Shown one piece after another: positions 1 to 19,571 of a stretch of DNA of 64,000 nt. The notes beneath the pieces were generated by a model. The model saw nothing but the letters and a program-made list of their open reading frames with translations. It had not been told where the DNA came from and did not search any database. The DNA comes from Schmidtea polychroa. Its lineage: Eukaryota. The translations under genes were made by a program, and so were the position numbers. Location: the NCBI GenBank assembly GCA_044892525.1, contig CM097887.1, forward strand, positions 115,112,397 to 115,176,396, written 5' to 3'. Position 1 is the first letter of the stretch. Every line of letters begins with the position of its first letter.

Positions 1-498
1 AGTACCCCAAGCCCAAATAAAGCACCGAGTAAATCAAATGAAACCGAGGAGGTTGAAGAGATTATCCTAGAAGATAGTGACGATGAACCAGGAGAAAGAT
101 CGCCACTATTAGTGAGATGGCCAACGGGAGCCGAGATCTGGACAACAAGTAGACCGTCGACGAGTTATCAACAACCGGAGAAACTAAACATCGAGGGAAT
201 CATCGACAATACGACAGAAACAGAAACAGATGAACAATTTAGGAAACAAAGAGAACCAACAAGAATAACTCCGGAAGGGCAAACCGATAAAATAATAGAC
301 GAATGGAATGAATGGCTGAGAAATAATGACAGTTCATTGCCCAGAACAGATAATGAAAGAAACCCGAATCACGAAAATACAAGAGAAGCCGGAACAACAA
401 TGGAAAAACGGACTAAAGGGAGACCCAAGAAACAAGGGGAAAAACCCGAATTTAAAACTAAGGAACAATTAAAGCAAGAACAAGGACAAGTCAGATAA
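1..498 (+). CDS. C-terminal part of an upstream ORF (acidic/basic low-complexity linker), open from base 1; probably the upstream part of the polyprotein
   Basis: Frame 1 has no stop from position 1 (STPSPNKAPSKSNETEEVEEIILEDSDDEPGERSPLL...) to TAA at 496-498; it overlaps the next frame, which is open from 473. Confidence 0.7.
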   Translation, partial: STPSPNKAPSKSNETEEVEEIILEDSDDEPGERSPLLVRWPTGAEIWTTSRPSTSYQQPEKLNIEGIIDNTTETETDEQFRKQREPTRITPEGQTDKIIDEWNEWLRNNDSSLPRTDNERNPNHENTREAGTTMEKRTKGRPKKQGEKPEFKTKEQLKQEQGQVR

Positions 499-529
499 AA
501 TAGTATGGGATCTAAAGGAAGCCCAACCC

Positions 530-945
530 ACGATTGAAAGAGGAGAAAAGTGGATACGGGAATTAATAAAAGATATGTTAATAATAACGAACCCGCAACT
601 CAGACGTCTATGGCAACGAAAAGTAGCAAGCATGGAAGCTAGACAGCTATGGCACATCGTGTCAGGGATAATCCCAAAGTTAATCAAGGAGAAAACAAAA
701 ACCACTAAAACGGATTGGGATGAAACGAGGAGAGTAATCGAACAACTCACAACGAATGCAAACGATGATGAACACCATCTAGTAGTAATAACCTATTTGA
801 TGTATAATTTGATGGGATTAGCTGCAAGAAAAATACCCAATAAACAATTCGCAAACCACGTAGAAATGACAGTAGCAATCATAGAAAATACTATCGAACC
901 ACATATTATCCGTGCCGGAGGATGGAAGAGACTCATCCAAGCGCC
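530..945 (+). other. Bcl-2-like domain within the polyprotein
   Basis: BH2-like HIIRAGGWKRL (GGW at 917-925); BH1-like hydrophobic helix HLVVITYLMYNL; BH4-like WIRELIKDML in the upstream frame extension; all-helical pattern. Recognised by eye only. Confidence 0.5.
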
Positions 946-3900
946 ACGGAAAAACGAACAGGAAAGATCAATGCAAGTCAGATTGAAAAAGTTGCTGAAT
1001 GAACTAGAATGGGAATTACCAATGAAAGATCCAGCTAGCAGAAAAGCGTCAATAAACTCGTTAATGATGACTATGATGATATGGATGTTATGTATCAGCG
1101 GAGCAACAGGCTTCACGATCTATGATTGCGATAATTCCGTAATGAGGGATAGATACTCACTAAGAGACATCGAGGAATGTAGACAAGCTTCACCAAATAA
1201 ATTAGATGTCGTGAACAAAAAAGTCTCATATCATGTGTATCAGGAATCGGATTTCATCAGGACGCTAGCCAAAGAGTGCGTAGTATCAAAGCGTGTGTTG
1301 GCATACTATTGCGGACAATATTCATATTCAACTCTTATACTACCCGGATTGGATAAAGAAATAGTGCCCATACAAAGTGAGGATTGCAAAGAACTGTTTA
1401 GAACCAGAGCGATGAGGATCCGAGACGGAGTAACAATACACGGGCAAAGTGGAATGATCAAAACAGAAAGCATTTACGTAGCCGGACGCGTAAAATCAAC
1501 TGATGGAACATGTAATGGAGGTACGTATACGATCAGAGGAGAGGCGATATCGGGAGTAGTAGTAATCGAGTCATATACAGTTGAGTTAAAAGAATACGAA
1601 GCACAATTTGACGCCAATAATTATCAAATGAAGACCAACCCAGCATGTAGAGCTACGGAAAACGTATGCAAGACGGGGGTTTCGACCATAATATATGAAG
1701 CTAACACCCAAAAATGCCGACTTCAATTGTTGAAAAGTGCTCTGTTCAACGAAGTAAAAGGGGAAATTTATGAGAACGAGGATGATGAGGACGGAAATGG
1801 AAAAGTGAGAATGCGAAATGGAAAACCAGTACTACCATCGCCCAAAGAAAAAAGGCTCACCACACAAAAAACACCAACAGCACTGATCACAGACGATCCG
1901 GACCTAGGCATGAGATTCATCAGAGGGAAGGAGACCACCAAATGCGATAGTATCGTCTACAAGACCAACTACGCAGGTATCTACATGTCACGGCAGATAA
2001 TAGATAGAGCAGTGGGAAAGATAGCCACAGAGGACGTCAAATTGTACCTATATGCTAATAACAAAATGGATTTTTTATTCCATCGTGGACAAACGACACT
2101 GCAAAAAGTATACTACGATCTTATACAAAACGATTGTTCATTAAATAAGGAGATACTGAAAACAAAACTAGCTATAGCGATAACGCACCCTGATAATACG
2201 ATGCCATCACTCCCATTACCGGATGGACATTTTGGTAGGATGGTGGGAGAAGTGATGTATACATATGCATGTACTAAGACGTTTGCACGAATGCCAGAAA
2301 AACCCACGATACCACCAGGGAAATGTGCAAACGAGTTGGAAATTCGTTATAAAGGGCAAAATCGATTCGTCCAACCAGTTACCAGAATTATGAACCCATT
2401 AGGTTTCTACCCAAATCTCTTTAACTGTTCCAATGCGTACGGACCATTATACGAGAGACCCGATGGGAAATGGATAATGTTACCGGTGAGGGCCACAGTG
2501 GAGGAACCCAAGAAGTTTGGATTAATAGAACTCGCTACGGAGCAAGATTTCAAGCCCATAGATGTATCAAACGGAGGCATGTATTCCGCAGCGGATCTAG
2601 AAACAGCACGGCTAAACATACTTTTCCCAGCCAGACGAGAATCAATATTATCAAACATGGTCACAATAACGGGGGGAACGAACTATCAATCAGGTCCAAA
2701 TTATGAACTACTACTATCACCAGAACATTTCCAACACGCAACGTCAAATATGATGAAGGCAATGTGGGGAAGATTCTTAGTATTCGGACAAATGATGGCA
2801 GGAATATTGGGAATCATACTCATAATTCAAATTGTCAGAGTAATATTGACACAAATGTTAGCCTGTTTCGATATATACAAAAGAGAAAAGAAAGTAAATT
2901 GGAAAATGATAGTAGGGTTTCTACCATTTTTAGCAAAAACCATGGTATTACATCGTCACTCAAAAGATATTCATCGAATAAAGCGATTGATCAAAATATT
3001 AACCAAGATTAAAGGAACCGATGAGGAAATAGGTAGACGATTCCGAAAAACCATGTACGACGAAGCAACGAGAAGACAACTGAAAAAGAACAAGCCAAAA
3101 TTCTTAGACCGATTCAGGAGTCAATCATCTAACAGCGATAGTGACGATGACGACGAAGGGAACCACAAATATCCGTATCCCAGCGGACATCCAAAGGAAA
3201 AGCAAATTGAAACCGCACCGTATTGGGAGAAGGATAAGACAAACACCTGGATAGCCAACGGAAGTTATATACCACCGGACATCGTTGGACAACAAGCAGC
3301 CCTGACCATGACACAAAATATGTATCCACAATTACCCAATCAATCCGGAATGAATTATATGCCGACGAGGAGAACCAGAAGTGTAGATCAAGCGGACGAT
3401 GTACGGACAATAGCAGCAATGAGTTTACCTGGAGGTCCGGCAGTAACAGTCATGATCCAAATCAACGGAAAAGAAACAAATGCTATGATCGACACCGGAG
3501 CTAACGTATCAGCAATAGCAATTAATCAAATTCCCAGCAGATATTGGAAAGATATCGAGTCAACAACAATCCACATCATAGCATGCAGTAAAGAAACAGT
3601 AGACGTGGTCGGAAGATGGTGGACCACCTTAAAATACCAAGATAACGAAATTGAAACGTATTTAGCAGTAATACCAAAACTAAGTGTACCATGCATAATC
3701 GGAACAGATCTAATGCCAGAACTACTAAAAGAAGTAGTAATCGATTTAACAACAATGTGCCTAAAGGATAAAACCGGCAGAATATGCACAATGAATGCGA
3801 TAATCAGATGTCCAGAAAAAATAATCGTACCAGCAAAATCACAGATGATCTGTCAAATAAAAGTAGACACGGGAATGGAAGGGGAAGTTATTTTCGAACC

Positions 3901-6871
3901 AAGTAAATCGTTTGAAAAACGACGAGAATTACCGCTAGCAAGAGAAATAATAACAATAAATCAAGAAGGAATGATACCGATCAACATCACGAATTTCGAA
4001 GAGGAAGACAAAATCATCTATGAGAATGAAAAATTGGGAAAATTGACCCCAATGATGGATATAGAACTACCAAAAGTGACCAACGACACAACCAAAAACG
4101 ACGAATTATGGACAATCGACAGTACATTGTTAACAGCTGCCGAAAAGAGAAAATTGCACCGATTGTTAGTGGAATACAAAGATATATTCGCCATCTCAGA
4201 TTTGGATTTGGGTACATGTGATGTCACCCTACATGCAATTCCACTGATAGATGAAACTCCAATCGCATTAAGACCATACAAACTAGCAGAAATGCAAAAA
4301 GAAATAGCTGAAGCAGAAGTGCAAAAGATGCTAGATGCAAAAGTAATCGAACCAAGTTGCTCACCTTGGCAGTTTCCAGTGGTCATGGTGAAAAAGAAAG
4401 ATGGCACGCAAAGATTCTGTATCGATTATCGAAAATTAAATGCAGTAACAAAGAGGGATACCTATCCATTGCCAGACATTAATGAAATGTTACTCATGTT
4501 GCAGGGGGCAGCATATTTTACTTCTTTAGATTTAAAAAGTGGATACTGGCAGATTAAAGTCAAAGATGAGGACAAAGAGAAGACCGCTTTCACTTTGGGG
4601 CGAGATCTATATCAGTTCAGGAAAATGCCATTCGGACTAACTAACGCACCAGCATCATTTCAAAGGTGTATGAACTTTGTCACTCATGGAATAAAACAGT
4701 GTATGGTATATATTGATGATTTACTAATATATTCAGCGACCTTTGAACAACATCTGGAGGATATCCGAAATGTATTTATTCGATTACGACAATGGAAACT
4801 CAAACTCAAACCTTCCAAATGCGATTGGGCAAAGGAAAAGGTTACGTTTTTAGGACACATAGTGTCAGCCAAAGGAAAAGAGCCAGACCCAAGAAACATC
4901 GAAAAAATAAAAACATGTCCAGCACCAAAAACTGTCACCCAAGTTCAGGAATTTCTCGGACTATGTGGATACTACCGTAAATTTATCAAAAATTATGCCG
5001 GAATTGCAAAACCAATCCAAGAACTGGTAAAGAAAGACATCTCATTCAGTTGGGGAAAAGAACAACAGGAGGCATTCGAGACGTTGAGAGATAAATTGAT
5101 TGAAGCACCAATCCTCGTACATCCGGATTTCAAGAAGCCATTTCTATTGGCAACAGACGCAAGCGGATATGCGGCCGGAGCAATTTTAGTCCAACTGGAT
5201 GACGAGGGAAAAGAGAGAGTAATTGGATATTACAGTCGAACATTCAAAAAGCATGAGAAGAACTATTCGGTAACAGAAAGAGAAGCATTAGCTATAATAC
5301 AAGCCATCAAACACTTCCGATATTTACTATGGGGACATGAGATATGCATAACCACAGATCATCAACCATTGGTGTGGTTAGGGCAACATAAAGAAGCGTC
5401 AAGTAGACTAATGAGATGGGCCATGCAATTACAAGAATACTCCCCATTTATAAAATTCAAAGCAGGAAGAGCAAATGCCAACGCCGATTGTATGTCAAGA
5501 TTTATTTTTCCAGATTTGGTGGATTCGGAAATGCAACGCATATGCTTAATAGTAGCGGAAGATTTGGACTTTTGCCAACTGCGAAAGGACCAACAAGAAG
5601 ACGCAGAATTAAAGCAAATTATCGATTATGTAAAAACAGGAAAAACCGAAGTGTATGCGAAAGACCAGAAATTAAAAGAACATATGGATAAACATCGACA
5701 TCGATACATTATAGATAAAGATTGGTTGCTAATAATGGATGGCGAAAAACGATTAATGTGCATACCGGAAAACAGACGAAAAGAGTTACTAACGCAATAT
5801 CACGATGGAAGATTGGGTGGACACATGTCATCAAAAAAGACTTTAGCAAGAATGAAACAGAAATATTTTTGGCCTGCGCTAACCGAAGACGTAACCGAAT
5901 GGGTGAAAAATTGTCTAACTTGTGCAACCAGGAAGAATACTGGATCGAAATGGAAAGCGCCGTTAACGCCAATGCCAGTACCGATAGAACCAATGACAAT
6001 GATATCAATGGACGTAGTCGGTCCATTACCCGAATCGGATAAAGGAAACGTTTATATTTTGGTAATTACGGATTACCTCACGAAATTCCCAGAGGCATTT
6101 GCTATGCCGGATCAAAAAGCTAAAACAATCGCAAATATCTTGGTAGAAGAAATATGTTGCCGATATGGAACGCCGAAGCAAATATTAACAGATCAAGGCA
6201 CAAATTTCATGAGTGAGATCATGAGCGAGGTGACCAACTACTTCAAAATCGCAAAGTTGAGAACATCACCGTATCACCCTCAAACAAACGGGATGACGGA
6301 AAGATTTAACGGAACACTTATCCAAATGTTGTCGAATTACGTCGACCGTCACCAACGAGATTGGGACGAATATATTAACCTATGTCTTATGGCTTATAGA
6401 ATGTCAATTCACGCATCAACAAAAATGAGCCCATTCAAATTAATGTACGGAAGGGAATGTAACATGCCAATGGACCTAGAATATCAACCACCAATATCGC
6501 AATATATGGAGATACACGATTATGTCACAAAATTCAAAGAAAGAATGCAGGAAATTTGGGAAACCGCGGGACTAAACATCAAATTCTACCAGGAAAGTTA
6601 TAAAGATTTACATGATCGAAAGAAAAACGTGAAGCAACATACCTTGCAGATAGGCGATTGGGTAATGATAGAAACACCAGAACTGATTCCGGGAACCACA
6701 AAAAAGTTACAACGAAACGGAAAAGGGCCATATGAGATCTTATTTGTAGGCGAAACTAACGTAAGAGTGAAATTGGTGAATAATCCGTTCACCAGGCCAA
6801 TATACGTAAATGTAGACGATGTAAACCAATCCCAAAAACAGCCATCAGTCAACCAGAAGGCCGTACGTTAA
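575..6871 (+). CDS. pol: Polyprotein: Bcl-2-like domain, internal signal, class III fusion glycoprotein, TM, tail, aspartic protease, RT, RNase H, integrase
   Basis: PR MIDTGANVSAI (~3484); RT PWQFPVVMVKKKDGTQRFCIDYRKLN, LDLKSGYWQI, MPFGLTNAP, YIDDLL (~4709); RH LATDASG, ITTDHQPL; IN H..H..CLTC, MDVVGP, TDQG, ERFN, GPYEI. The frame is open from 473. Confidence 0.95.
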   Translation: MLIITNPQLRRLWQRKVASMEARQLWHIVSGIIPKLIKEKTKTTKTDWDETRRVIEQLTTNANDDEHHLVVITYLMYNLMGLAARKIPNKQFANHVEMTVAIIENTIEPHIIRAGGWKRLIQAPRKNEQERSMQVRLKKLLNELEWELPMKDPASRKASINSLMMTMMIWMLCISGATGFTIYDCDNSVMRDRYSLRDIEECRQASPNKLDVVNKKVSYHVYQESDFIRTLAKECVVSKRVLAYYCGQYSYSTLILPGLDKEIVPIQSEDCKELFRTRAMRIRDGVTIHGQSGMIKTESIYVAGRVKSTDGTCNGGTYTIRGEAISGVVVIESYTVELKEYEAQFDANNYQMKTNPACRATENVCKTGVSTIIYEANTQKCRLQLLKSALFNEVKGEIYENEDDEDGNGKVRMRNGKPVLPSPKEKRLTTQKTPTALITDDPDLGMRFIRGKETTKCDSIVYKTNYAGIYMSRQIIDRAVGKIATEDVKLYLYANNKMDFLFHRGQTTLQKVYYDLIQNDCSLNKEILKTKLAIAITHPDNTMPSLPLPDGHFGRMVGEVMYTYACTKTFARMPEKPTIPPGKCANELEIRYKGQNRFVQPVTRIMNPLGFYPNLFNCSNAYGPLYERPDGKWIMLPVRATVEEPKKFGLIELATEQDFKPIDVSNGGMYSAADLETARLNILFPARRESILSNMVTITGGTNYQSGPNYELLLSPEHFQHATSNMMKAMWGRFLVFGQMMAGILGIILIIQIVRVILTQMLACFDIYKREKKVNWKMIVGFLPFLAKTMVLHRHSKDIHRIKRLIKILTKIKGTDEEIGRRFRKTMYDEATRRQLKKNKPKFLDRFRSQSSNSDSDDDDEGNHKYPYPSGHPKEKQIETAPYWEKDKTNTWIANGSYIPPDIVGQQAALTMTQNMYPQLPNQSGMNYMPTRRTRSVDQADDVRTIAAMSLPGGPAVTVMIQINGKETNAMIDTGANVSAIAINQIPSRYWKDIESTTIHIIACSKETVDVVGRWWTTLKYQDNEIETYLAVIPKLSVPCIIGTDLMPELLKEVVIDLTTMCLKDKTGRICTMNAIIRCPEKIIVPAKSQMICQIKVDTGMEGEVIFEPSKSFEKRRELPLAREIITINQEGMIPINITNFEEEDKIIYENEKLGKLTPMMDIELPKVTNDTTKNDELWTIDSTLLTAAEKRKLHRLLVEYKDIFAISDLDLGTCDVTLHAIPLIDETPIALRPYKLAEMQKEIAEAEVQKMLDAKVIEPSCSPWQFPVVMVKKKDGTQRFCIDYRKLNAVTKRDTYPLPDINEMLLMLQGAAYFTSLDLKSGYWQIKVKDEDKEKTAFTLGRDLYQFRKMPFGLTNAPASFQRCMNFVTHGIKQCMVYIDDLLIYSATFEQHLEDIRNVFIRLRQWKLKLKPSKCDWAKEKVTFLGHIVSAKGKEPDPRNIEKIKTCPAPKTVTQVQEFLGLCGYYRKFIKNYAGIAKPIQELVKKDISFSWGKEQQEAFETLRDKLIEAPILVHPDFKKPFLLATDASGYAAGAILVQLDDEGKERVIGYYSRTFKKHEKNYSVTEREALAIIQAIKHFRYLLWGHEICITTDHQPLVWLGQHKEASSRLMRWAMQLQEYSPFIKFKAGRANANADCMSRFIFPDLVDSEMQRICLIVAEDLDFCQLRKDQQEDAELKQIIDYVKTGKTEVYAKDQKLKEHMDKHRHRYIIDKDWLLIMDGEKRLMCIPENRRKELLTQYHDGRLGGHMSSKKTLARMKQKYFWPALTEDVTEWVKNCLTCATRKNTGSKWKAPLTPMPVPIEPMTMISMDVVGPLPESDKGNVYILVITDYLTKFPEAFAMPDQKAKTIANILVEEICCRYGTPKQILTDQGTNFMSEIMSEVTNYFKIAKLRTSPYHPQTNGMTERFNGTLIQMLSNYVDRHQRDWDEYINLCLMAYRMSIHASTKMSPFKLMYGRECNMPMDLEYQPPISQYMEIHDYVTKFKERMQEIWETAGLNIKFYQESYKDLHDRKKNVKQHTLQIGDWVMIETPELIPGTTKKLQRNGKGPYEILFVGETNVRVKLVNNPFTRPIYVNVDDVNQSQKQPSVNQKAVR
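1052..2950 (+). other. Env-like class III fusion glycoprotein (chuvirus/Monjiviricetes G, gB-like) within the polyprotein
   Basis: Signal-like INSLMMTMMIWMLCISGATG|FTIYDC. Cys pattern ECVV..YYCG, DCKELF, DGTCNGG, central helix NDCSLNKEILKTKLAIA, GEVMYTYAC, CANELEI..FVQPVTRI, CSN..P.Y..GKW, GMYSAADLE. TM FLVFGQMMAGILGIILIIQIVRVIL at 2774-2848. Confidence 0.85.
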
Positions 6872-6894
6872 CCACACGTTCGCAAACTTACCGA

Positions 6895-10254: not shown

Positions 10255-10638
10255 TTGAGGATGTATGTAAAATTAAGAATGGAGCAAAGAAATAACGAAA
10301 TAAATCGCAATACAACAACCGAAGATATGTGGAAGCAACAATGTGCTGGACTAGCACAACTAGTGTCAAATTTGCAGGAACAAGGACTTACGATGCAAAG
10401 AAACCTAGTTGATAGCCTAAACAAAGGATTTAGCTATTTAAAAATAATCGAGGAGCAGAGAGCAGTAATAGAACAGATGCAAAGAGAGATAGAGCGGATA
10501 ACAAGATACAGCCAGAGACAGGAAGAAGAATTAGTGAGGATGGCGGAAGAAGCAGAATACGAGGAAATGGAAGATTGGTCAGAATGGTTAATGAGTAGAG
10601 AAGAGGGCGGACAGGAGGCCGACTCTTCTGAACCATAA
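10255..10638 (+). CDS. Small coiled-coil protein with an acidic tail, unknown function
   Basis: 127-aa ORF with heptad pattern; conserved in the second copy (MWKQQCA.LAQL, DWSEWL, EEGGQEADSS). Confidence 0.8.
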   Translation: MRMYVKLRMEQRNNEINRNTTTEDMWKQQCAGLAQLVSNLQEQGLTMQRNLVDSLNKGFSYLKIIEEQRAVIEQMQREIERITRYSQRQEEELVRMAEEAEYEEMEDWSEWLMSREEGGQEADSSEP

Positions 10639-10704: not shown

Positions 10705-12111
10705 ATGTGTATAATTGTAGACATGGATAAACAAAAGAGAGAAGAGTTCAACGAAATCATCGAGTTAGTCAGAGATTCCGCAGCAATCAGAATACACAAA
10801 CATGTCATGTGTGGAATATGTGAAAAATTATTAAAAGAACCCCATCAAACCCAATGCGGATGCAGAGTGTGCAAAGAATGTATAAAAGAAACAATAAAAA
10901 ACCGACCACAGTGGTGCCCGATATGTAAAGAGACACTGATATCAAGTTTAGAAGATACTAATGAAGACAAAGCCGCGGTAAAGGACATGTTGAACACTAA
11001 TCTGGGATGTAAAAATACCCCATGTGAATGGAAAGGATCAATATGGAAAGTGAAACAACATCTGGTGGAATGTATGTACAAAGTCAGCCAGTGTGAACGA
11101 TGCCAGAAATTAATTCAAGCTAACGAAGAAAAGGAACATCAAAGTCAGTGTGAAGAAAGGTTGGAAAGATGCGAATATTGCGGAGAAGTAGACACATGGA
11201 AAAATCTCACCATCAAACATCACAATGTCCAAGAGGAAAAGGTATGTGCAGAATTCTGTGGTGAATGCCCGAACGGATGCAACAAAGGGGGAGTAATAAA
11301 ATTAGCCCAGCATCTAAAAGAATGCGAAAGGAAAAGAATGATATGCGTACTAGGCAAATGGGGGTGTCAGAAATTACTACACCGAGAAGACTTGCCACAC
11401 CACTTAACCGAAAATGTAATAACTCACGCAGAGATGTGGTCAACTGCACTACAAGACAGTGAAGAGAAAGTGCGACAAATGGAGATAGAAATAACCTCAC
11501 TGAAAGCATTAGTAAAAGAACTGCTAGAAGAACGAGAGGCTTTTGAACAAGCTCGAGCAAACATAAAAATGCAAATTAATCGAATGGAAATCAGTAACGA
11601 TCAGGCCAAAGTACTGCATCAGAAAATAAATGAAATCAATCTAAATGAGGTAATACCAACTGCACCGTATATATGGAAAATAACGGGAGTAAAAGAAAGA
11701 GTACGAAAAGCAAAAACCGGAGAAGATACAAGACTAACAAGCCCCGCATTCCATTCCTGGAAAAACGGATACAAAATGAAAATGAAGGTATATCCCAACG
11801 GGAACGGGACCGGATTAGATACGCATTTTTCGATCTTCTTTATGCTCTGCAAAGGGGAGTATGATGAAATATTAGAATGGCCATTCCAGGCAAAAATCGA
11901 TATTACACTAATGAACAACCAAAGTATACACGAGCAAAGCTTCAAAACAACGGGGAATCAAATAGCTTACCAGAGGCCCCTCAACGAAGAAGGAGCAGCA
12001 ACAGGAGCACCGACGTTCATTTTACAACAAAGGGTAGAAGATATGGCGAGAAATGATACCGTATATATCAAGATGACGGTTCGGAGGGAAGGAAAGAGTA
12101 GAACCGAGTAA
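10705..12111 (+). CDS. TRAF: Intronless full-length TRAF-family protein (RING, TRAF zinc fingers, coiled coil, MATH), TRAF2/3/5-like
   Basis: RING CGIC..QCGCRVCKEC..CPIC; zinc fingers CKNTPCEWKG, CERC, CEYC, CPNGC; MATH YIWKI..SPAF..GYKM..YPNGNGTG..THFSIFF..EWPF. Confidence 0.95.
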   Translation: MCIIVDMDKQKREEFNEIIELVRDSAAIRIHKHVMCGICEKLLKEPHQTQCGCRVCKECIKETIKNRPQWCPICKETLISSLEDTNEDKAAVKDMLNTNLGCKNTPCEWKGSIWKVKQHLVECMYKVSQCERCQKLIQANEEKEHQSQCEERLERCEYCGEVDTWKNLTIKHHNVQEEKVCAEFCGECPNGCNKGGVIKLAQHLKECERKRMICVLGKWGCQKLLHREDLPHHLTENVITHAEMWSTALQDSEEKVRQMEIEITSLKALVKELLEEREAFEQARANIKMQINRMEISNDQAKVLHQKINEINLNEVIPTAPYIWKITGVKERVRKAKTGEDTRLTSPAFHSWKNGYKMKMKVYPNGNGTGLDTHFSIFFMLCKGEYDEILEWPFQAKIDITLMNNQSIHEQSFKTTGNQIAYQRPLNEEGAATGAPTFILQQRVEDMARNDTVYIKMTVRREGKSRTE

Positions 12112-12304: not shown

Positions 12305-13360
12305 ATGACACAAGAGAAAACAACTGAAACTACGATGACCCCAAATGATACCAACAAGACACAAATCCCCAGAGAATATAGTGAGAAATGGAACAAGGTG
12401 ATGTTCCAATTAGCTAACCTCACCCGAAATCACATTGAGGAAGCCAGAGAGTACGAAACCCACAAATACCAATGGCTGGTAGACAATTTAAGAACGGAAG
12501 CGGAAACATGTAAAAGGGCCGCAAAATGGGCTTCGTTAGAAAATACTCGACAAGAATCGCACAGTCACTATCTAAAACAACTACTACAAGAATCGCGGAA
12601 AAGACTGACTGATGAGAATAAAAAACGAGAGACCGAAAAACAGAAAGAGGAGAAAAAGATGCGACATCTATTGGCAGAAGCACGAAAATGGAAACGACAG
12701 AACAGAGAAATGAGAAAGGAAATGAAGGAATTGCCTACGAGATTAGAGTACGAGAGCGAGCAGGGCAAATGGGAAGAGAACTTAGTTATAAAAGAGGAAC
12801 TAAAACGGCTAAGAAAGATCGCGGCTCGGAGCCAAACCTGGCAGACCAAGGCCATGGAGTTTGAAAGACATTTAGCCATGAAACTCTCCATAAGGGAGCA
12901 CGAGAATGCAGCGATGGAAGAATTGATACTCCAGCAGTCGGGGCGAGTCGGGGAATTAATAAATCAAGTCACCGAGCTAAAACGAGATGTCAATGGATAT
13001 CAGGGAGCTCTGGAACAAAGAAACATGGTATTGGTAGGAAAAAATAAAAAGCTAGAAAACGAAAGAAAAATGTATAACGAAAATCTCAAAAATTTGAAGA
13101 TAGAAATCGAGAAATGGAAGGGCGACGAAAAGATAGAAGAGTTTGATAGGCAACTAAAGGTAAAAGATGAGGAGATGAGATACCTCACCTACCTACTCGA
13201 CGAGGAACTGAATATCACAAGAGCCTTACTAGATGAAGTTCAGGAACTGAGGGCTCAAATTCCCCAATATTACATACCATATGACCCTATTGCCGTTCAA
13301 CTACAGGCAGCGGTCGAGAGCGATGAAGGATACGGGGGTCAGGAGGAAACCTTCGTATAG
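12305..13360 (+). CDS. Long coiled-coil protein ending in ETFV, unknown function
   Basis: 351-aa E/K/R-rich heptad ORF; its N-terminus is conserved at 58650-58921 on the minus strand (AEAEACKRAARWASLE). Confidence 0.8.
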   Translation: MTQEKTTETTMTPNDTNKTQIPREYSEKWNKVMFQLANLTRNHIEEAREYETHKYQWLVDNLRTEAETCKRAAKWASLENTRQESHSHYLKQLLQESRKRLTDENKKRETEKQKEEKKMRHLLAEARKWKRQNREMRKEMKELPTRLEYESEQGKWEENLVIKEELKRLRKIAARSQTWQTKAMEFERHLAMKLSIREHENAAMEELILQQSGRVGELINQVTELKRDVNGYQGALEQRNMVLVGKNKKLENERKMYNENLKNLKIEIEKWKGDEKIEEFDRQLKVKDEEMRYLTYLLDEELNITRALLDEVQELRAQIPQYYIPYDPIAVQLQAAVESDEGYGGQEETFV

Positions 13361-13534: not shown

Positions 13535-14239
13535 ATGAAGATTGAAGAGATAGTTGAACCCATGAGTGAAGTAGAAGAAGGAGAGATTATAATGGAAGTC
13601 GCAGAAACACAAATACTAAAGAAAGAATTACGAGAAGAGAAACGAGAAAACGAGAGATTAGTAAACAAATATATAGAAGATCGGAAGATAATTAAAGTAC
13701 TAAAGAAAGAATGCAAAATGCTAGGAGAAGTAAAGAGGGAAGCAGCAGAGAGAAATGAATGGCTGCAGGAACAACAAACACGAGGAAGAAATTGGGAAAG
13801 GATTGCAGAGGAATTATGGCAAGAGAGGGCAAGCTTCAAAGCAGAAGAAGTAATCCAAGACTACTGGAAAACAGAGGCGAGAGAACGCCAAACAACCATA
13901 AATAGATTAAATCGACAATTGGAGGAAAACCAACGAGAAAGTGAAGAAATGAAGAAATGGATTCGCAAATACAAAGAAATTGAGAGACAACAACAACAAC
14001 GAAACCCTCCACAGGAGAACGAACAAGATTTCCTAAAAATCGAGTTAAAAAGAAATCTTGACAAGAAACGAGAAGAAATAAGCAAACTAAAAAGGGAGAT
14101 AAGACACCTAAAACGGGAAGCCCGTGAAAAAGATCGGCAATTAGAGATGATGCCGGAATTAAGACACCGGGTCATTAAAGCGGAGTCTACCCTGATGAGA
14201 AATGCCGAAAATAATCCCAAAGGAGAACCGTCTAACTAA
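13535..14239 (+). CDS. Coiled-coil protein, unknown function
   Basis: 234-aa E/K/R-rich ORF, co-oriented and with the same A-rich codon bias as its neighbours. Confidence 0.75.
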   Translation: MKIEEIVEPMSEVEEGEIIMEVAETQILKKELREEKRENERLVNKYIEDRKIIKVLKKECKMLGEVKREAAERNEWLQEQQTRGRNWERIAEELWQERASFKAEEVIQDYWKTEARERQTTINRLNRQLEENQRESEEMKKWIRKYKEIERQQQQRNPPQENEQDFLKIELKRNLDKKREEISKLKREIRHLKREAREKDRQLEMMPELRHRVIKAESTLMRNAENNPKGEPSN

Positions 14240-14278
14240 AAGCAATTAAAGCCAGTGTAAATAATATAATAATAATAG

Positions 14279-14890
14279 ATGTATATTAGTACAATGCGGT
14301 ATGAAATAGTGATAACAGTAATGGTATTGATAAATCACCTGATGGAGAAACAACCATTAAATGCTCAACTGACAAGCATACGAGATCACCGCAATCGAAA
14401 TCAACAAGCCAAACCAGAACCTTGCCAATGCCAATACCCTAGTACAATAAAAACCAACATCCTCCATATAATCCAGTCAACTCGGTCATATGTTAATAAC
14501 GTCAGAAGTCTGTGCAAAAATCACCCCAGATGCCGAATGATGGACCGAAAAATACTCGAACAAGTCCAACACTTCGATCAGTTGGAACAACAAATACAAC
14601 AAGAAGTGTTCGAAAATCCGGCCGAGACAACAGAAACATCCTCAAATAACAGCGACACCCACTACCTTCTCTACGTAGTGGTCACAGAAACTATCTTGTT
14701 ATGCCTCATAACCTTCCTAAAAATCCTCGAAGTTAAGAAAAAATGTCAGAGCTCGAAATCTAGAGCCACAGTACAAAACCCAGCCGAAATAACCAATGTT
14801 ATCCAAACCACAAGCTCACCCAGATTAAACCATAAAGAATCTCCTCAACCATCGTCCAATCGCCCAGTCTACCCTAACACCAGTTCCTAA
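14279..14890 (+). CDS. Putative type I membrane protein
   Basis: N-terminal hydrophobic stretch (IVITVMVLI), four Cys in the predicted ectodomain, TM YLLYVVVTETILLCLITFL followed by KKK, S/T/P-rich tail. Confidence 0.7.
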   Translation: MYISTMRYEIVITVMVLINHLMEKQPLNAQLTSIRDHRNRNQQAKPEPCQCQYPSTIKTNILHIIQSTRSYVNNVRSLCKNHPRCRMMDRKILEQVQHFDQLEQQIQQEVFENPAETTETSSNNSDTHYLLYVVVTETILLCLITFLKILEVKKKCQSSKSRATVQNPAEITNVIQTTSSPRLNHKESPQPSSNRPVYPNTSS

Positions 14891-15499
14891 TTGTAGCAGC
14901 AAACCCCAACCAGAACCATCAGAGTGACCGAACAATGCCAGAACTGAACTAAAAACATTATGTTGTGAAAAACTTTGTTGTGTATATAAACCATCACCAT
15001 AAGTGATGCCTGCTTGGTCTTGATTTGACCTATATCTTATTAATAAAATTCTATTGATGTTTATAATTTTGTTAATCACTATGTTATCTTTTTATGAATG
15101 TGTTTATCTTTTTATGAGAGAGTAAGAGTAGCTCAAGTATGTAATTGCGGGACGCAATTTTATCGGGTCCCCGAGTGATTTGTTGGGCTGAGTCGAAAGC
15201 ATAATCGTCAAATTTAGGACAGATAAGACGCGAACAAATAAAATAAGACCACAAATTGCTAAAATAAATAAATCAAGAGACAAAAGAAACAATAACGTAA
15301 AATATTAAGATTAAAACAAAAAATAAAAAATAGAAAAATTAAAATAAGGTAATAAGATAAGGAATAAAATGACGAAAAATGCAACAAATAATGAGGAATT
15401 TAAGAAACAAATAAAAAATATATTAAAATAAAGAAAAATAAGGAAAAACAACCAAAGAAATAAGAAAAACAAATTAATTTAAAAGTTAAAGCGGTACTC

Positions 15500-15590
15500 A
15501 ATTTTGATTGGTCCGCATAAACAAAAAATTCCTATATAAGCAAACAGCAAATTCAATATAGTTACTGTTTAACAAACACCATTACAGGTA
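15500..15590 (+). promoter_or_regulatory. Putative Pol II promoter (LTR or internal) with first exon and splice donor
   Basis: ATTGG (reverse CCAAT) at ~15507, TATATAAG at 15533-15540, TAGTT Inr-like site ~28 nt downstream, CAG|GTAAGC donor at 15588. Confidence 0.5.
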
Positions 15591-17680
15591 AGCTCATAAT
15601 TTAAAAACTTACTGTTTAACAAACACCATTACAGATCAACACTCAACCATTACAGACGATCACCGACGTACAACCTAAACGACTATCAGGGACAATTAGA
15701 TTTTTAACTCAGTACAATAACCGAATTCAGCTTTTCGACTCAGCTTTTCGAGATCACAGATCGATAAAGAATAAAGTAAGGATGTATTCTTATTATGAAT
15801 TCGAGTAAATGTTTCTCATGGAAGTTAATAGTAATAATGTTTATTATCACAATTTTAATAAAATTTTAATGTTCTCTCCATTTGGTCTCATATTTTAATA
15901 ATCAAATAGTTTCAGTAATGAAATTTAAAACCTTTTATGATAGATAACTATGCATGATGATTTCGATTTTTATGGAATTTATATGAAAATTATGGTTGAG
16001 TAACGTGGAGTTGAGGAGACCTGTACCATGGTGTGAGGAGCCTTCGGGATCTCAGCCGGTGGGTACAGACTTCTTCAATCACGCAGCTGACGTGGGCCGG
16101 AAAGTGGGGGCTTCCTCACGGGTCCGTCGCTGAGGGAATTAAAATGTTGCAAGAATTAGCTGACAATAACATAGAATACCATTCGGATTGGAAGATGAGG
16201 ACGATCTTAAAATCCATGACTGAGGTGGCTACAAACGTTTATTTTTCAAAACCCATCATTCTTAGCTGTTACATCTTGAATTCTTTACCTAATACCCGTA
16301 ATCAGTCTGAATCGCCTAAGTGTGCCAATCGACATTCCATCTTCTGAGTACCAAACCCATTTCTGTTGAAATGCACGTCAATTTCCGTCTGACCTGTAGA
16401 AACTGAGTACCAACCCATTCGTCGACGCTATACAATCACATGAGAAGTATAGATGAAATTTATTGAACACAATTTTTTATTAAGAAAATGTATTACGAAA
16501 CTGTTTTATTTTTAACCAAATTATTTCGAAGTGTTCTGAAAATTACACTCACAGTAGGATAAACTCCCTTCAGTAAAGGACACCTCCGATTGACCTTGTT
16601 AAATTGCAGATTTTTCGAATAAGTCGAAGGAAATGTCCACGAAATAAAGTTATCCAAGTAGAAAACACAATTAACTGCACATCGCGGGGAACAAATCCAA
16701 CATTAGCGTTTGATGAGAGAGCAACCTAGATGACATATTGATTCCACGAATTGATTCGACCCAGTGGTGTATTGCGATCATCTGCGAACGATAATTCCGA
16801 TAATGAGCAAACATACGAGATAAATCACACGCACTAACACACTAGTACTTACTCACATATGCGACATGCAGTATTTTCCCAGTCAGCTACAAGTATTGAG
16901 AACCGAAATTAAAACACGCACAGACAACAAGGCTGGCTCGGATAGATAGCAGGCCGCCTGTCTCATGCTTCCATTATCTGGCATGACGAACTATTTTTCA
17001 TGAGATTGATCTTATTACAGGTGTTTCCCGACATATAGCTAATTTCATCGTAGATTAAAATTTTAACTTGCAGAATGGTAATTCCGAACATTAATAATAG
17101 ATAACGGCCAGGTGATTGGTGCATATTCCAAATAATTTGGTATTAAACGGGGACCCAGCAGCTATTGAGTGGAGATTAATTTTGCCTGCGCATCCGCTTG
17201 CCGAGGTGGGAATTCTGAGTTATGTCCTGGGGGAATAATGCGTTGGTTAAGGGGGAAATCGGAAGGCGTTAACAATAAAATTTTGTTTTCTGCGTTTGGT
17301 CTATTTCCAAAGATATTATTTGAAGGAATTATTAGTTATCGGCTCAATTTCGTTGTCCATTTTGTGTACAAGGAGGTTGGGCATCCCCGCATCTAATTAA
17401 TTACGAATTTGTTTTTGTTGTTTCTCCATTACACCAAGGGAAAGAGGGTCACGGCTTACAACTCGACCGGTAGATGACATTCGAATTTAATAATAATAAC
17501 TCAGAGATTTTCTTCACCCATTAGCATAAATCCCTTCCTCTTAATATATTAGGACCACATCAAAATTAATGTATAGCTTGTAGGAAAATTCATAGATGAT
17601 TAGGCCACCAGGCTGGTTTAAATAGACATAGCGAATCTTGTATTTTATCCTTATTGTTTCTTTCATTCTAGCCATTGAGA

Positions 17681-18430
17681 ATGTTACCAAGCTCGAAGTC
17701 GTCTCTCAAACCCTGCTTCTCATGCTCAGATAAGAATTCTATAATCAGGGATTTGCAAGCCCAGATCGGTCGATACAAGAAAGCGATCGACCATCTGGAA
17801 GGTACATGGTTCAGCCCAGTACAAATGAAGGAGGTACAAAAGAAATTGTACCGAAGCGAGCACTGTCGCGACGCCTTAATAAGCGAGAGTAGGGCCCAAC
17901 GCAGTCTTATCAAAGAGCAGTCCGAGGCTCTACACAAGGTCTACGTACAAGCGGCAGCAACTAGAAAGATAGTGAGTATACCTATCAATGGAGCGGACGA
18001 CCTTTTCCCCGTCCATCATGAACTTCCTTCCAATTCGTCATCTTCGGCTAAGAAGCCCTGCCGGGAATGCGTGGAAGCCGATCTCTCTCCCAGGTCAACC
18101 ATAGTGTCTCCCATTGGAGCCCAGAAAGGGTTATCATCGACCGCGTCTTCCTCTGTCGTACTATCAAACACCCTGATTGTTCCAAAACCCAAGCGTCGAC
18201 AGTTGTCCAGAGCTGAGCGTAAAAAGCGTCAGCGCGAACGAGCAATCGCCAAACAAAGTGGACTATCTGCCGAGCTCTCCAGTACTTCGAACGATCCCCC
18301 TGTAACGATCGATTTAACCGTAGGGATCCCAGGGCGAATCATCTCCGCCGCTGGTGTAACTTGGGAGGAGAATGCCTCCGAATTCTTCGAGCTGGAGGAG
18401 CTGTTAGCCGACGCAGAATGGGAAAAGTAA
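17681..18430 (+). CDS. Basic/Ser-rich protein with coiled coil, NLS-like cluster and acidic C-terminus; probably a spliced accessory gene
   Basis: ATG at 17681 lies 9 nt after a polypyrimidine-AG acceptor (17641-17671); PKPKRRQLSRAERKKRQR; AATAAA at 18567. Confidence 0.6.
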   Translation: MLPSSKSSLKPCFSCSDKNSIIRDLQAQIGRYKKAIDHLEGTWFSPVQMKEVQKKLYRSEHCRDALISESRAQRSLIKEQSEALHKVYVQAAATRKIVSIPINGADDLFPVHHELPSNSSSSAKKPCRECVEADLSPRSTIVSPIGAQKGLSSTASSSVVLSNTLIVPKPKRRQLSRAERKKRQRERAIAKQSGLSAELSSTSNDPPVTIDLTVGIPGRIISAAGVTWEENASEFFELEELLADAEWEK

Positions 18431-19569
18431 AGATCTCAATCCAATGCAACTACATCGATCATGTTTAGTAAATTGAACGATTCTGACTTATATGTTCTCG
18501 TAAACCGTCTTCCCTTGATTTATATTAGTCCTGTAGTTTTAACTGTATAGCGTACTATGATAGTAGAATAAAGAAATTTTCGTCATTTCTTATTGTCAGT
18601 TTTTGTTTGATTAGCCATTATAAAGGTTCAGAGTAGGTTTTACAACCCAAGCGCAAACTTTAGTTCGAAAAGCATTAGACAATCTGTATATAACTCGGTG
18701 TCAGGTAGGGAAGGAAATGGTGGAGTGATCAGACGTAAGCCCTTCCATCGGCAGTCAGAAAAAGGAAGTCGAGGCCTCAGTAAGGAGTAGTCCTAAGGTA
18801 GGGGCTCACCTGCTTACTGGTGTCTCGCCGGCATAGCACATTTCCAACGTGGAGCAATTCACGGGTGCTATGTTGGAGTACAAGTTGTGCGGGGTCTTGC
18901 TCCGGATTGACGTAAGCACACTTAGCGTAAATGAATGGACACTCATCTCCTAGACAGGTGCGTAAATGAGTTAAGGTCAATCAAGCACTACCCCAGCACA
19001 AACATGATTTAAAAGATTGACACCATCATGGAAAACAAGGGTCAAAGATTACCCAGGTAAAAAGTCCAAAAATTCAAAAGTCTTAGAAATTTTTCTGCAC
19101 ATTTGAACTTTTATTTTTTAAAACTTTTAAAAACTTAAATGAGTTTTTTCACTGTGTTTTAATACATTAATCAATATAAGAAGAGAATGATATATTAATA
19201 ATATATGTATTGTCATTTAAAATAAAAAAAAATATATTCAAACCGTGTAAAGTTATATATAGTTGAAAAGAGCAAACGAATATCTACAGATGACATATTA
19301 TTCAACATATGATCATATAAATTGAACAAGATATTAAAATTAAAATTTTTAAAAATTTCAAAAATAAAGTTTATAAAAAAATAAAGTTTTGATATGTTTT
19401 AGGGTATCACAAAACGAATATTTTTCATTAAGGAACAATATCTTTAAAATGACTTAAAACATGTTTACATGTCTTTGTTAGTCATGTATTAGTTAATCAT
19501 ACATTTAAACGTCTTTATTATTCGTGCACTTCTATTGCACATGTCTTTGTTAATCATACATTGAAACTC

Positions 19570-19571
<2 letters not shown>

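What the first reader, a model, noticed from the sequence alone, without database searches (positions are those of the whole stretch)
1..18980. Giant enveloped-virus-like Ty3/Gypsy element carrying a cell-death/NF-kB modulation kit
Seen: one co-oriented unit combining Gypsy pol with a class III fusion glycoprotein, a Bcl-2-like domain, ankyrin modules, a full TRAF, three coiled-coil proteins, membrane proteins and a basic protein. It covers ~19 kb without gag or the 5' LTR. Known: vBcl-2 (herpesviruses, poxviruses) and ANK proteins (poxviruses) are accessory genes of large DNA viruses, and TRAFs are host TNFR/TLR adaptors. Giant (>30 kb) 'Burro' Metaviridae with extra domains are described from Schmidtea mediterranea, so this may be a relative. 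I cannot confirm whether the env plus Bcl-2 plus ANK plus TRAF architecture has been reported. Inference: a complex, possibly once-infectious endogenous retrovirus-like lineage, separate from Retroviridae and errantiviruses, that manipulates host survival and innate signalling.
Basis: partly seen in the sequence, partly recalled or inferred. Interest (0 to 1): 0.95.

Follow-up and report, generated by a model that had tools for sequence, protein, structure and literature searches.

The report
Burro-type giant planarian Gypsy retroelement
This is the 3' two-thirds of a giant Gypsy-type endogenous retrovirus-like element carrying a viral fusion glycoprotein, a TRAF, an ankyrin protein and a possible Bcl-2-like domain; the anatomy is real, but the same architecture was already published for the 'Burro' elements of planarian flatworms.

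Summary
Window 1-14,890 (+) is one dense, co-oriented, stop-free coding block. It has its own composition (A 0.39-0.47, GC ~0.40) against 70-80% A+T flanks.

What it encodes:
- A 2,098-aa ORF holds a weak Bcl-2-like N-terminus, a near full-length Monjiviricetes-type fusion glycoprotein (Pfam E=4e-71) with its own signal-like segment and membrane anchor, then PR-RT-RNaseH-IN (best solved relative: Ty3, E=3e-121).
- Downstream lie an ankyrin protein with a C-terminal anchor, a basic membrane protein, a complete TRAF (RING, zinc fingers, coiled coil, MATH), three coiled-coil proteins and a small membrane protein.
- About 4 kb of non-coding, LTR-like sequence follows, ending near 19,000.
- The window cuts the element 5'. 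A relative's protein (P0001) shows gag with CCHC knuckles upstream.
- A decayed collinear copy of four accessory genes lies at 58,665-61,740 (-), so these genes travel with the element.

Arkhipova & Yushenova 2019 (PMC6431247), citing Jurka 2007 and Grohme 2018, describe Burro/GYPSM1 elements of Schmidtea. They report in-frame env between BCL2-like and PR, MATH/TRAF, ankyrin and BIR, and the same idea of tampering with apoptosis and ubiquitination.

The Bcl-2 call stays inconclusive in my tests. Function and infectivity are untested.

The parts
1..495 (+). 3' end of an upstream ORF that runs off the window (165 aa, acidic, then basic at its end). It is part of the Gag-side polyprotein region.
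   Evidence: Open from base 1. 33% identical to residues 1232-1391 of P0001, a 1,497-aa relative with Retrotrans_gag and two CCHC knuckles. In P0001 this part and the next ORF's start lie in one frame. Here one change of frame separates them.
575..6871 (+). 2,098-aa ORF: Bcl-2-like / glycoprotein / PR / RT / RNase H / IN polyprotein, with no internal stop.
575..1045 (+). Helical N-terminal domain, possibly Bcl-2-like (residues 1-157).
   Evidence: Pfam Bcl-2 E=0.0064-0.056, below cut-off. Relative P0003 hits the same part of the profile at E=7.7e-5. AF2 model is all-helical with pLDDT 55. Foldseek gives no significant hit; Bcl-xL prob 0.84 and adintovirus Bcl2 prob 0.66.
1058..2881 (+). Viral fusion glycoprotein (env-like), residues 162-769. 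It includes a signal-like hydrophobic segment (158-183), an ectodomain with 14 Cys, and a membrane anchor (732-767).
   Evidence: PF24664 Monjiviricetes_fusion E=4.3e-71, profile 3-208 and 260-579 of 653. Hydropathy.
3449..3724 (+). Retroviral-type aspartyl protease.
   Evidence: RVP E=8.8e-11, profile 7-96/101
4388..5440 (+). Reverse transcriptase and RNase H.
   Evidence: RVT_1 1-205/205 E=7.9e-36. RT_RNaseH 1-105/105 E=1.9e-39. Ty3 Gag-Pol 7q5b_A E=3.1e-121.
5762..6331 (+). Integrase (zinc-binding domain and catalytic core).
   Evidence: Integrase_H2C2 E=1.6e-20, rve E=8.1e-13. Foamy-virus integrase chains E~1e-24.
6895..9438 (+). 847-aa ankyrin-repeat protein with two repeat blocks and a C-terminal hydrophobic anchor (residues 734-758).
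   Evidence: Ank_2 E=9.1e-20, second block E=3.4e-6. Hydropathy. Its frame is already open from 6784, so it overlaps the end of the previous ORF.
9445..10113 (+). 222-aa basic protein (pI 9.5) with one hydrophobic segment (145-176). No known family.
   Evidence: A homologue is present in the decayed second copy.
10255..10638 (+). 127-aa acidic coiled-coil protein.
   Evidence: 64-75% identical to the second copy.
10705..12111 (+). 468-aa complete TRAF: RING, TRAF zinc fingers, coiled coil (236-297) and MATH/TRAF-C (322-459).
   Evidence: Pfam. PDB hits TRAF3, TRAF1 and TRAF2 at E~1e-28 to 1e-26 and TRAF6 RING-ZF at 3.2e-15. Nearest database protein is only 28% identical.
12305..13360 (+). 351-aa coiled-coil protein.
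   Evidence: No Pfam family.
13535..14239 (+). 234-aa coiled-coil protein.
   Evidence: Only a weak Fib_alpha coiled-coil hit.
14279..14890 (+). 203-aa small membrane protein (hydrophobic 1-22 and 127-155), basic.
   Evidence: No Pfam family.
14891..19000 (+). 3' non-coding part, probably an A-rich tract followed by the 3' LTR. Its composition differs from the coding block. The 3' edge is approximate.
   Evidence: Composition. No partner repeat in the window. Contains an unexplained 251-aa ORF at 17675-18430.
58665..61740 (-). Decayed, divergent second copy of the accessory block (basic protein, small coiled coil, TRAF, large coiled coil) in the same order. It contains an assembly gap, left as it is.
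   Evidence: 65% nt identity over about 1.9 kb and 29-75% aa identity. Breaks counted: basic-protein homologue 2 stops. Small coiled coil 1 frame change and 1 stop. TRAF 3 frame changes and 5 stops. Large coiled coil 1 stop.

Best explanation
Identity. The region is the 3' part of a Burro-type giant Ty3/Gypsy (Metaviridae) endogenous retrovirus-like element of a planarian flatworm. It runs from inside the Gag-side polyprotein to the 3' LTR and is cut 5' by the window edge. This copy looks young, because nine consecutive ORFs over 14.9 kb have no stops.

How it most likely works. The anatomy below is shown; the dynamics are inferred.
- A full-length RNA made from the missing 5' LTR is translated into a very long polyprotein.
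- The glycoprotein sits in frame between a cytosolic helical (Bcl-2-like) domain and Pol.
- The glycoprotein's own signal-like segment (residues 158-183, aligned to the start of the viral glycoprotein profile) would thread the ectodomain into the ER lumen.
- The anchor at 732-767 would return the chain to the cytosol. PR-RT-RH-IN then stay on the cytosolic side and are released by the element's protease.
- This gives a Gag-Env-Pol element that can coat its particles with a fusion protein of negative-strand-RNA-virus type and pass between cells.

Accessory cassette. The genes downstream of pol are a membrane-anchored ankyrin protein, a TRAF with an apparently complete RING, coiled-coil proteins and small membrane proteins. 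They are element-borne copies of host signalling modules. Most plausibly they bias cell-death and TRAF/ubiquitin signalling in the expressing cell in the element's favour. That last step is inference only.
For: - One unit: dense co-oriented ORFs with short gaps and a shared composition (A 0.39-0.47, GC 0.38-0.42, AT skew 0.29-0.56), unlike the flanks.
- Domain calls.
- Gag upstream in relatives, in one frame with the homologues of both the 5'-cut ORF and the big ORF's start: P0001 and P0005.
- A second relative, P0003, also joins the Bcl-2-like part to the start of the glycoprotein.
- Accessory genes are repeated as a collinear block elsewhere in the window.
- Published Burro/GYPSM1 description (PMC6431247): gag with CCHC, MATH_TRAF_C, BCL2-like, env in frame between BCL2 and PR with hits to mononegavirus fusion glycoproteins, PR-RT-RH-IN, ankyrin, BIR and Smc-like coiled coils.
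- BURRO1 is transcribed, enriched in intestine and under piRNA control (PMC8532177).
- Host hints: 70-80% A+T flanks (planarian genomes exceed 70% A/T, PMC11410931) and a mir-753 hairpin at 23418-23479.
Against: - No Burro reference sequence could be compared, so family membership rests on architecture and on the literature, not on identity.
- The arrangement differs from published Burro1. There, MATH_TRAF_C lies upstream of BCL2 inside a 4,873-aa ORF1. Here a whole TRAF is a separate ORF downstream of pol.
- No BIR was found in the part within the window, and no dUTPase between PR and RT.
- The Bcl-2-like call is not significant in any single test.
- Neither LTR could be delimited.
- The host species was not identified. 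Two exact look-ups of neighbouring ORFs found nothing.
- Large protein databases hold almost no relatives, so conservation could not be measured.
- Nothing here bears on expression, particle formation or any effect on host signalling.
Confidence: 0.85

Rival explanations
1. An independent, non-Burro lineage of env-carrying Gypsy elements. It could come from another flatworm or another phylum and have assembled a similar accessory set by convergence or by exchange of cassettes.
For: - Gene order differs from published Burro1 (TRAF downstream as its own ORF), and no BIR or dUTPase was detected.
- The nearest database relative is only 33-63% identical.
- GAG-ENV-POL Gypsy elements occur in several phyla and are not monophyletic (PMC13524379).
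Against: - The very specific junction of Bcl-2-like, in-frame mononegavirus-type glycoprotein and PR matches Burro and is otherwise described as unique (PMC6431247).
- Accessory modules are reported to shift between separate ORF and polyprotein within the Burro group itself. In the Dugesia tigrina element, MATH_TRAF_C is a separate ORF.
- The A+T-rich flanks and mir-753 fit a planarian.
Confidence: 0.09
2. The element is real but not infectious. The glycoprotein and accessory ORFs would be carried passively or used only inside the cell, for example for cell-cell fusion or membrane targeting. The accessory genes would have no effect on host death or immune signalling.
For: - No evidence of any kind for particles or transmission.
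- Only one N-glycosylation sequon in a 554-aa ectodomain.
- RNAi against BURRO1 or RT inhibitors did not change the smedwi-2 phenotype (PMC8532177).
Against: - A near full-length glycoprotein with signal, 14 cysteines and an anchor is kept open in frame.
- All accessory ORFs are intact in this copy.
- The accessory block is old enough to have diverged to about 50% amino-acid identity between families while keeping its order.
Confidence: 0.3
3. A chance juxtaposition or assembly chimera, in which an ordinary Gypsy element lies next to host TRAF, ankyrin and coiled-coil genes.
For: TRAF and ankyrin modules are ordinary host domains, and the window is a mosaic of transposons.
Against: - The ORFs are intronless, tightly packed and co-oriented, with the same unusual A-rich composition as pol.
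- There is no assembly gap in 1-19,000.
- The block recurs in the same order at 58,665-61,740.
- The TRAF is only 28% identical to the nearest database TRAF.
- The same combination is published for Burro.
Confidence: 0.03

Closest known systems
[quoted passage not shown] 2018; Arkhipova & Yushenova 2019, PMC6431247)
   Same: - Gypsy PR-RT-RH-IN.
- Env-like fusion glycoprotein in frame between a BCL2-like motif and PR, with hits to mononegavirus glycoproteins.
- MATH/TRAF, RING, ankyrin and coiled-coil (Smc-like) modules.
- Gag with CCHC upstream (seen here only through relative P0001).
- Very large size and an A+T-rich host genome.
   Different: - Here a complete TRAF is a separate ORF downstream of pol, not a MATH domain upstream of BCL2 in the polyprotein.
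- The coding part is split into at least nine ORFs rather than one 4,873-aa ORF1 plus accessories.
- BIR and the dUTPase-like region were not detected in the part within the window.
- Sequence identity to the references could not be measured.
Burro-like element of Dugesia (Girardia) tigrina (PMC6431247)
   Same: The MATH/TRAF module is encoded by a separate accessory ORF rather than inside the polyprotein. The overall Gag-Env-Pol layout is the same.
   Different: There the accessory ORF is upstream; here it is downstream of pol. A midasin-like region is reported there and was not seen here.
GAG-ENV-POL 'errantiviruses' of Platyhelminthes, Nematoda and Bryozoa (Chary & Hayashi, PMC13524379)
   Same: Ty3/Gypsy elements with env placed between gag and pol, and an env of a class III-type fusogen.
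   Different: - Those env genes are described as herpesvirus gB-type and as separate ORFs.
- Here Pfam assigns the protein to the Monjiviricetes fusion-glycoprotein family, and it is in frame with pol.
- No accessory cassette is described there.
Mosquito BEL/Pao element 'Anakin' with a captured chuvirus glycoprotein (Dezordi et al. 2020, PMC7642597; PMC10084718)
   Same: An LTR retroelement that carries a glycoprotein from negative-strand RNA viruses of the same class (Monjiviricetes).
   Different: - Different superfamily (BEL/Pao) and a different host phylum.
- Ordinary size.
- Env is a separate gene.
- No host-signalling accessory genes.
Complex retroviruses and foamy-like fish endogenous retroviruses with accessory ORFs (cited in PMC6431247)
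   Same: Reverse-transcribing elements with env and several accessory ORFs downstream of pol.
   Different: They belong to Retroviridae, reach at most about 17 kb, and have env after pol. Their accessory genes are not TRAF, ankyrin or Bcl-2 homologues.

Membership tests
Ty3/Gypsy (Metaviridae) LTR retroelements | Pol domain order PR-RT-RNase H-IN | tested here: met
   Pfam domains lie in that order within one ORF.
Ty3/Gypsy (Metaviridae) LTR retroelements | RT-RH-IN most similar to Ty3-type enzymes | tested here: met
   Best solved relative is the Ty3 Gag-Pol polyprotein 7q5b_A, E=3.1e-121 over 736 residues. Retroviral enzymes score far lower.
Ty3/Gypsy (Metaviridae) LTR retroelements | Two long terminal repeats with a target-site duplication, a primer-binding site and a polypurine tract | tested here: inconclusive
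   Only the 3' side is in the window. No partner repeat was found, and there is no tRNA gene or PBS to test. An A/G-rich tract near 15.2-15.5 kb and a compositional edge near 19,000 are compatible with a 3' LTR.
Ty3/Gypsy (Metaviridae) LTR retroelements | Gag with zinc knuckles upstream of pol | tested here: inconclusive
   Gag lies outside the window. Relative P0001 carries Retrotrans_gag and two CCHC knuckles upstream of the parts homologous to window 1-495 and 575-799.
Burro / GYPSM1 giant Gypsy elements of dugesiid planarians | Env-like fusion glycoprotein in frame between a BCL2-like region and PR | tested here: met
   PF24664 spans residues 162-769 of the ORF that continues into PR at 959.
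Burro / GYPSM1 giant Gypsy elements of dugesiid planarians | BCL2-like motif | tested here: inconclusive
   Pfam Bcl-2 is below cut-off in the window (17.5 bits against 31.4) and in relative P0003 (23.6 bits), at the same profile positions. Profile against PDB gives Bcl-xL at E~1.4. Fold searches were not significant.
Burro / GYPSM1 giant Gypsy elements of dugesiid planarians | MATH/TRAF and RING modules | tested here: met
   A complete TRAF at 10705-12111. Its position differs from published Burro1.
Burro / GYPSM1 giant Gypsy elements of dugesiid planarians | Ankyrin repeats | tested here: met
   Ank_2 E=9.1e-20.
Burro / GYPSM1 giant Gypsy elements of dugesiid planarians | BIR domain, and a dUTPase-like region between PR and RT | tested here: not met
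   No BIR hit in any ORF of the window part. No dUTPase hit in the 226-aa PR-RT linker, even at E<=0.5. BIR could lie upstream of the window. The published dUTPase call came from HHpred, a more sensitive method.
Burro / GYPSM1 giant Gypsy elements of dugesiid planarians | Total length over 30 kb with multi-kb LTRs | not testable with these tools
   At least 19 kb lies in the window and the 5' part is missing. I left out extending the element (see referred steps).
Burro / GYPSM1 giant Gypsy elements of dugesiid planarians | Host is a dugesiid planarian | tested here: inconclusive
   The flanks are 70-80% A+T, and there is a full-length mir-753 hairpin. That mir-753 is a planarian family is my recollection, not verified (searches found no paper). 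Exact look-ups of two neighbouring ORFs found nothing.
Burro / GYPSM1 giant Gypsy elements of dugesiid planarians | Sequence similarity to the reference Burro-1 to -4 sequences, and placement in their RT clade | not testable with these tools
   No reference sequence is reachable, and Grohme et al. 2018 is not held.
Class III viral fusion glycoproteins | Membership of a glycoprotein family with that fold, and the fold itself | tested here: inconclusive
   Family membership is strong (PF24664, E=4.3e-71). The fold was not verified. There is no sequence hit in the PDB, and the single-sequence model has pLDDT 29.6, so it was not searched. Class III status of chuvirus-like and rhabdovirus G proteins is taken from PMC13524379.
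TRAF proteins | RING, TRAF zinc fingers, coiled coil and C-terminal MATH (TRAF-C) | tested here: met
   Pfam RING 36-74 and MATH 322-459. TRAF6 RING-ZF chains align to 34-168, and TRAF3, TRAF1 and TRAF2 to 252-460. Coiled coil at 236-297.

The most novel reading that the evidence does not exclude
This could be an undescribed subfamily of Burro-like endogenous retroviruses that is still intact. In it the host-derived genes (membrane-anchored ankyrin protein, full TRAF, coiled-coil and small membrane proteins) form a separate cassette downstream of pol. A single hydrophobic segment would serve both as the tail of a Bcl-2-like domain and as the signal of an in-frame glycoprotein. That would solve the membrane topology of a Gag-Env-Pol polyprotein in a way not yet described for retroelements.
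Probability: 0.25. Interest if true: 0.5.

Novelty: already known. Interest (0 to 1): 0.3.

Why it matters
Burro-type elements are among the largest retroelements known. They combine a glycoprotein from negative-strand RNA viruses with host cell-death and ubiquitin-signalling modules, in an animal whose only dividing cells are piRNA-guarded stem cells. They are therefore a natural system for asking how a retroelement reaches a heritable cell lineage, and what accessory genes add to that.

This copy contributes detail rather than a discovery:
- an apparently intact example with a full TRAF as a separate gene;
- a readable membrane topology for the in-frame glycoprotein;
- a second, decayed family member that keeps the order of the accessory genes.

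The functional questions raised in 2019 remain open.

Tried and rejected
Searches that came back nearly empty:
- Word-indexed protein searches with the first 900 residues of the big ORF, with the TRAF ORF and with the glycoprotein alone gave 1, 1 and 0 hits. The full HMMER scan with the N-terminal 200 residues gave one hit. No conservation analysis or deep alignment was therefore possible.
- PDB sequence searches with the N-terminal domain and the glycoprotein found nothing.
- A two-sequence profile of the N-terminal domain put Bcl-xL only among non-significant hits.
- NCBIfam added nothing.
- Exact look-ups of two non-element ORFs to name the host found nothing.
- Grohme et al. 2018 could not be read.
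- Literature searches for mir-753 in planarians returned nothing.

Structure work:
- The AF2 model of the N-terminal domain was low-confidence (pLDDT 55). Both fold searches were non-significant.
- The AF2 model of the glycoprotein ectodomain failed (pLDDT 29.6), so I did not search with it.

Other negatives:
- Looking for the LTR partner, inner repeats or a PBS in the window gave nothing usable.
- I considered and rejected the host-gene juxtaposition and assembly-chimera readings (see rivals).

Full report
**What is there**

The + strand of window 1-14,890 is an almost gap-free run of open reading frames in one direction: 1-495 (open at the window edge), 575-6871, 6895-9438, 9445-10113, 10255-10638, 10705-12111, 12305-13360, 13535-14239 and 14279-14890. 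The gaps between them are 6 to 193 nt, and none has an internal stop.

All nine ORFs share an unusual composition: A 0.39-0.47, GC 0.38-0.42, AT skew 0.29-0.56. The sequence beyond about 19,000 is 70-80% A+T with no skew. There is no assembly gap inside 1-19,000. A 2,098-codon ORF in such sequence cannot arise by chance.

**The large ORF**

Pfam finds the following, in order:
- a weak Bcl-2 match (residues 51-117, E=0.0064, 17.5 bits against a cut-off of 31.4);
- a strong match to the fusion glycoprotein family of Monjiviricetes (PF24664, E=4.3e-71; residues 162-366 and 446-769 on profile positions 3-208 and 260-579 of 653);
- a retroviral protease (959-1050), reverse transcriptase (1272-1430, full profile), RNase H (1493-1622), and the integrase zinc domain and core (1730-1902).

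The best solved relative of the pol part is the Ty3 Gag-Pol polyprotein, at E=3.1e-121 over 736 residues. Caulimovirus and retroviral enzymes score far behind. The pol is therefore Ty3/Gypsy.

The glycoprotein is nearly full length. Hydropathy shows a segment at 158-183 that aligns with the very start of the viral profile, that is, with the glycoprotein's own signal. It also shows a strong anchor at 732-767. The 554 residues between them contain 14 cysteines.

**The accessory genes**

- The 847-aa ORF has two blocks of ankyrin repeats and a C-terminal hydrophobic anchor.
- The 468-aa ORF is a complete TRAF. Its RING and zinc fingers align with TRAF6 chains (E=3.2e-15). Its coiled coil plus TRAF-C aligns with TRAF3, TRAF1 and TRAF2 (E about 1e-28 to 1e-26). 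The closest protein in the large database is only 28% identical.
- The ORFs at 10255, 12305 and 13535 are rich in heptad-patterned charged helices, well above shuffled controls.
- The ORF at 9445 is basic with one hydrophobic segment. The ORF at 14279 has two hydrophobic segments.
- None of these last five matches a Pfam family.

**The ends**

The first ORF runs off the window. The only long relative found, P0001 (1,497 aa, a UniParc entry), carries Retrotrans_gag and two CCHC knuckles. Its residues 1232-1391 match window 1-495 (33% identity), and its last 75 residues match the first 75 of the large ORF (63%).

So gag lies upstream of the window. In that relative, gag, the linker and the start of the Bcl-2-like part are in one frame. 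In the window one change of frame separates the 5'-cut ORF from the large ORF. I cannot tell whether that is a programmed shift or the single break of this copy.

Downstream of 14,890 the composition changes. There is an A-rich tract, then about 3.5 kb of GC 0.35-0.5 without skew, and the GC content drops sharply near 19,000. This is compatible with a 3' LTR. With no partner in the window, its limits cannot be fixed.

**Are the accessory genes part of the element?**

Besides composition and packing, the window holds a second, decayed copy on the minus strand at 58,665-61,740. Homologues of the basic protein, the small coiled-coil protein, the TRAF and the large coiled-coil protein follow each other there in the same order. 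Identity is 65% at the nucleotide level and 29-75% at the amino-acid level.

That copy is broken:
- the basic-protein homologue has 2 stops;
- the small coiled-coil gene has 1 frame change and 1 stop;
- the TRAF has 3 frame changes and 5 stops;
- the large coiled-coil gene has 1 stop.

It also holds an assembly gap, which I left as it is. A repeated, collinear, diverged block is what a family of elements leaves behind, not what single-copy host genes would.

**The Bcl-2-like call**

- One short relative, P0003 (205 aa, from a 1.2-kb environmental contig), is 30% identical. It hits the same part of the Bcl-2 profile at E=7.7e-5 and then continues into the start of the glycoprotein profile.
- A two-sequence profile places Bcl-xL only among non-significant PDB hits (E about 1.4).
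- The AlphaFold model is an all-helical bundle of low confidence (pLDDT 55, pTM 0.51).
- Foldseek finds nothing significant. Bcl-xL appears at probability 0.84 and an adintovirus Bcl2 at 0.66.

The signals all point the same way, but none is significant. I rate the call as inconclusive, perhaps 70% likely.

**What is known**

Arkhipova and Yushenova (2019, PMC6431247) review the Burro elements of Schmidtea mediterranea (Grohme et al. 2018), first described as GYPSM1 by Jurka (2007). These are Gypsy-like, with an internal region of up to 25 kb and a total length over 30 kb, in thousands of copies. The published features are:
- PR-RT-RH-IN;
- a RING zinc finger, Smc-like regions, MATH_TRAF_C, BIR and ankyrin repeats;
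- a BCL2-like motif;
- gag with CCHC knuckles;
- a dUTPase-like region between PR and RT;
- an env region in frame between BCL2 and PR that hits fusion glycoproteins of mononegaviruses.

They state that accessory ORFs may alternatively exist as subdomains of the polyprotein. In the Dugesia tigrina element, MATH_TRAF_C is a separate ORF. They propose that Burro elements are integrated proviruses that interfere with apoptosis and ubiquitination. BURRO1 is transcribed, enriched in the intestine and held down by the piRNA pathway (PMC8532177).

Gypsy elements with env between gag and pol are also reported from flatworms, nematodes and bryozoans, there with gB-type env (PMC13524379). A chuvirus glycoprotein captured by a BEL/Pao element is known from mosquitoes (PMC7642597, PMC10084718).

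**Comparison**

The window's element matches Burro in its most specific feature, the Bcl-2-like / in-frame glycoprotein / PR junction, and in its set of modules.

It differs from published Burro1 in three ways:
- It has a whole TRAF as its own gene downstream of pol.
- Its coding part is split into many ORFs.
- Within the window it lacks a detectable BIR or dUTPase.

I could not compare it with the reference sequences or build a tree, and I could not name the host. The A+T-rich flanks (PMC11410931) and a full-length mir-753 hairpin at 23,418-23,479 fit a planarian. That mir-753 is a planarian family is my recollection only.

**Mechanism**

Shown:
- the domain order;
- the signal-like and anchor segments;
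- intact reading frames;
- linkage of the accessory block.

Inferred:
- The signal-like segment threads the ectodomain into the ER, and the anchor returns the chain to the cytosol. Gag, the helical domain and Pol would then be cytosolic and the fusion protein luminal, all from one polyprotein cut by signal peptidase and the element's protease.
- Particles would acquire the glycoprotein and pass between cells. In an animal whose stem cells are guarded by PIWI proteins, this could serve to reach heritable cells from differentiated tissue, as gypsy does in flies.
- The Bcl-2-like domain, the TRAF and the ankyrin protein would bias cell-death and TRAF/ubiquitin signalling in the expressing cell.

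I give the identity about 0.85. I give the membrane topology about 0.6, and a real effect on host signalling about 0.4.

I did not extend the element upstream, and I did not fetch DNA of other copies by look-up (see referred steps).

Two slips:
- Searches printed the bounds of separate alignment pieces for the decayed copy.
- I recalled a few short textbook motifs in my reasoning.

**Verdict**

The function is untested, and the architecture is already in the literature.

Noticed in passing
window 23418-23479 (+): Full-length match to the Rfam family mir-753 (63.2 bits, gathering score 62), in an A+T-rich stretch 4.4 kb downstream of the element. It is a possible host marker. I recall the family as planarian but found no paper to confirm that.
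   Followed up: partly
window 17675-18430 (+): A 251-aa ORF with GC 0.51 and no Pfam family, inside the putative 3' LTR. Its composition is unlike the element's coding block. It could be a chance ORF or an LTR-borne gene.
   Followed up: partly
window 19534-19944: A 164-nt tandem repeat (2.3 copies) containing (ATT)n runs, starting about 500 nt after the compositional 3' edge of the element.
   Followed up: no
window 25934-27298 (+): ORF of a pogo/Tc5-type DDE transposase (DDE_1 E=5.8e-26, HTH_Tnp_Tc5 E=6.5e-12).
   Followed up: partly
window about 28100-34233 (-): An ordinary-sized Gypsy element on the minus strand. Its RT-RH is 36% identical to the giant element. It has a 294-nt direct repeat pair at 29226-29519 and 33940-34233 (99%). 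A second integrase-like match at 28245-29036 lies outside that pair, so two elements may abut here.
   Followed up: partly
window 21864-22497 and 44248-44881: A 634-nt inverted pair, 95% complementary, each arm overlapping an ORF of about 230-240 aa with no Pfam family. These are two copies of an unclassified repeat.
   Followed up: no
window 37479-37709: Three copies of a 72-nt tandem repeat (98% identical) inside a 707-aa minus-strand ORF (35692-37815) with no Pfam family.
   Followed up: no
window 41103-41849 (-) and 51990-52406 (-): Small ORFs with a CCHC zinc knuckle and a BED zinc finger respectively, probably remains of other transposons.
   Followed up: no
window 53609-53752 and 60984-61153: Two runs of N. 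The second lies inside the decayed second copy of the accessory block. Both were left as they are.
   Followed up: no
window 6784-6871: The frame of the ankyrin ORF is already open 88 nt before the stop of the pol ORF. The two frames overlap, as do the frames of the 5'-cut ORF and the large ORF at 473-495. This may reflect frameshift-type expression or simply separate initiation.
   Followed up: no
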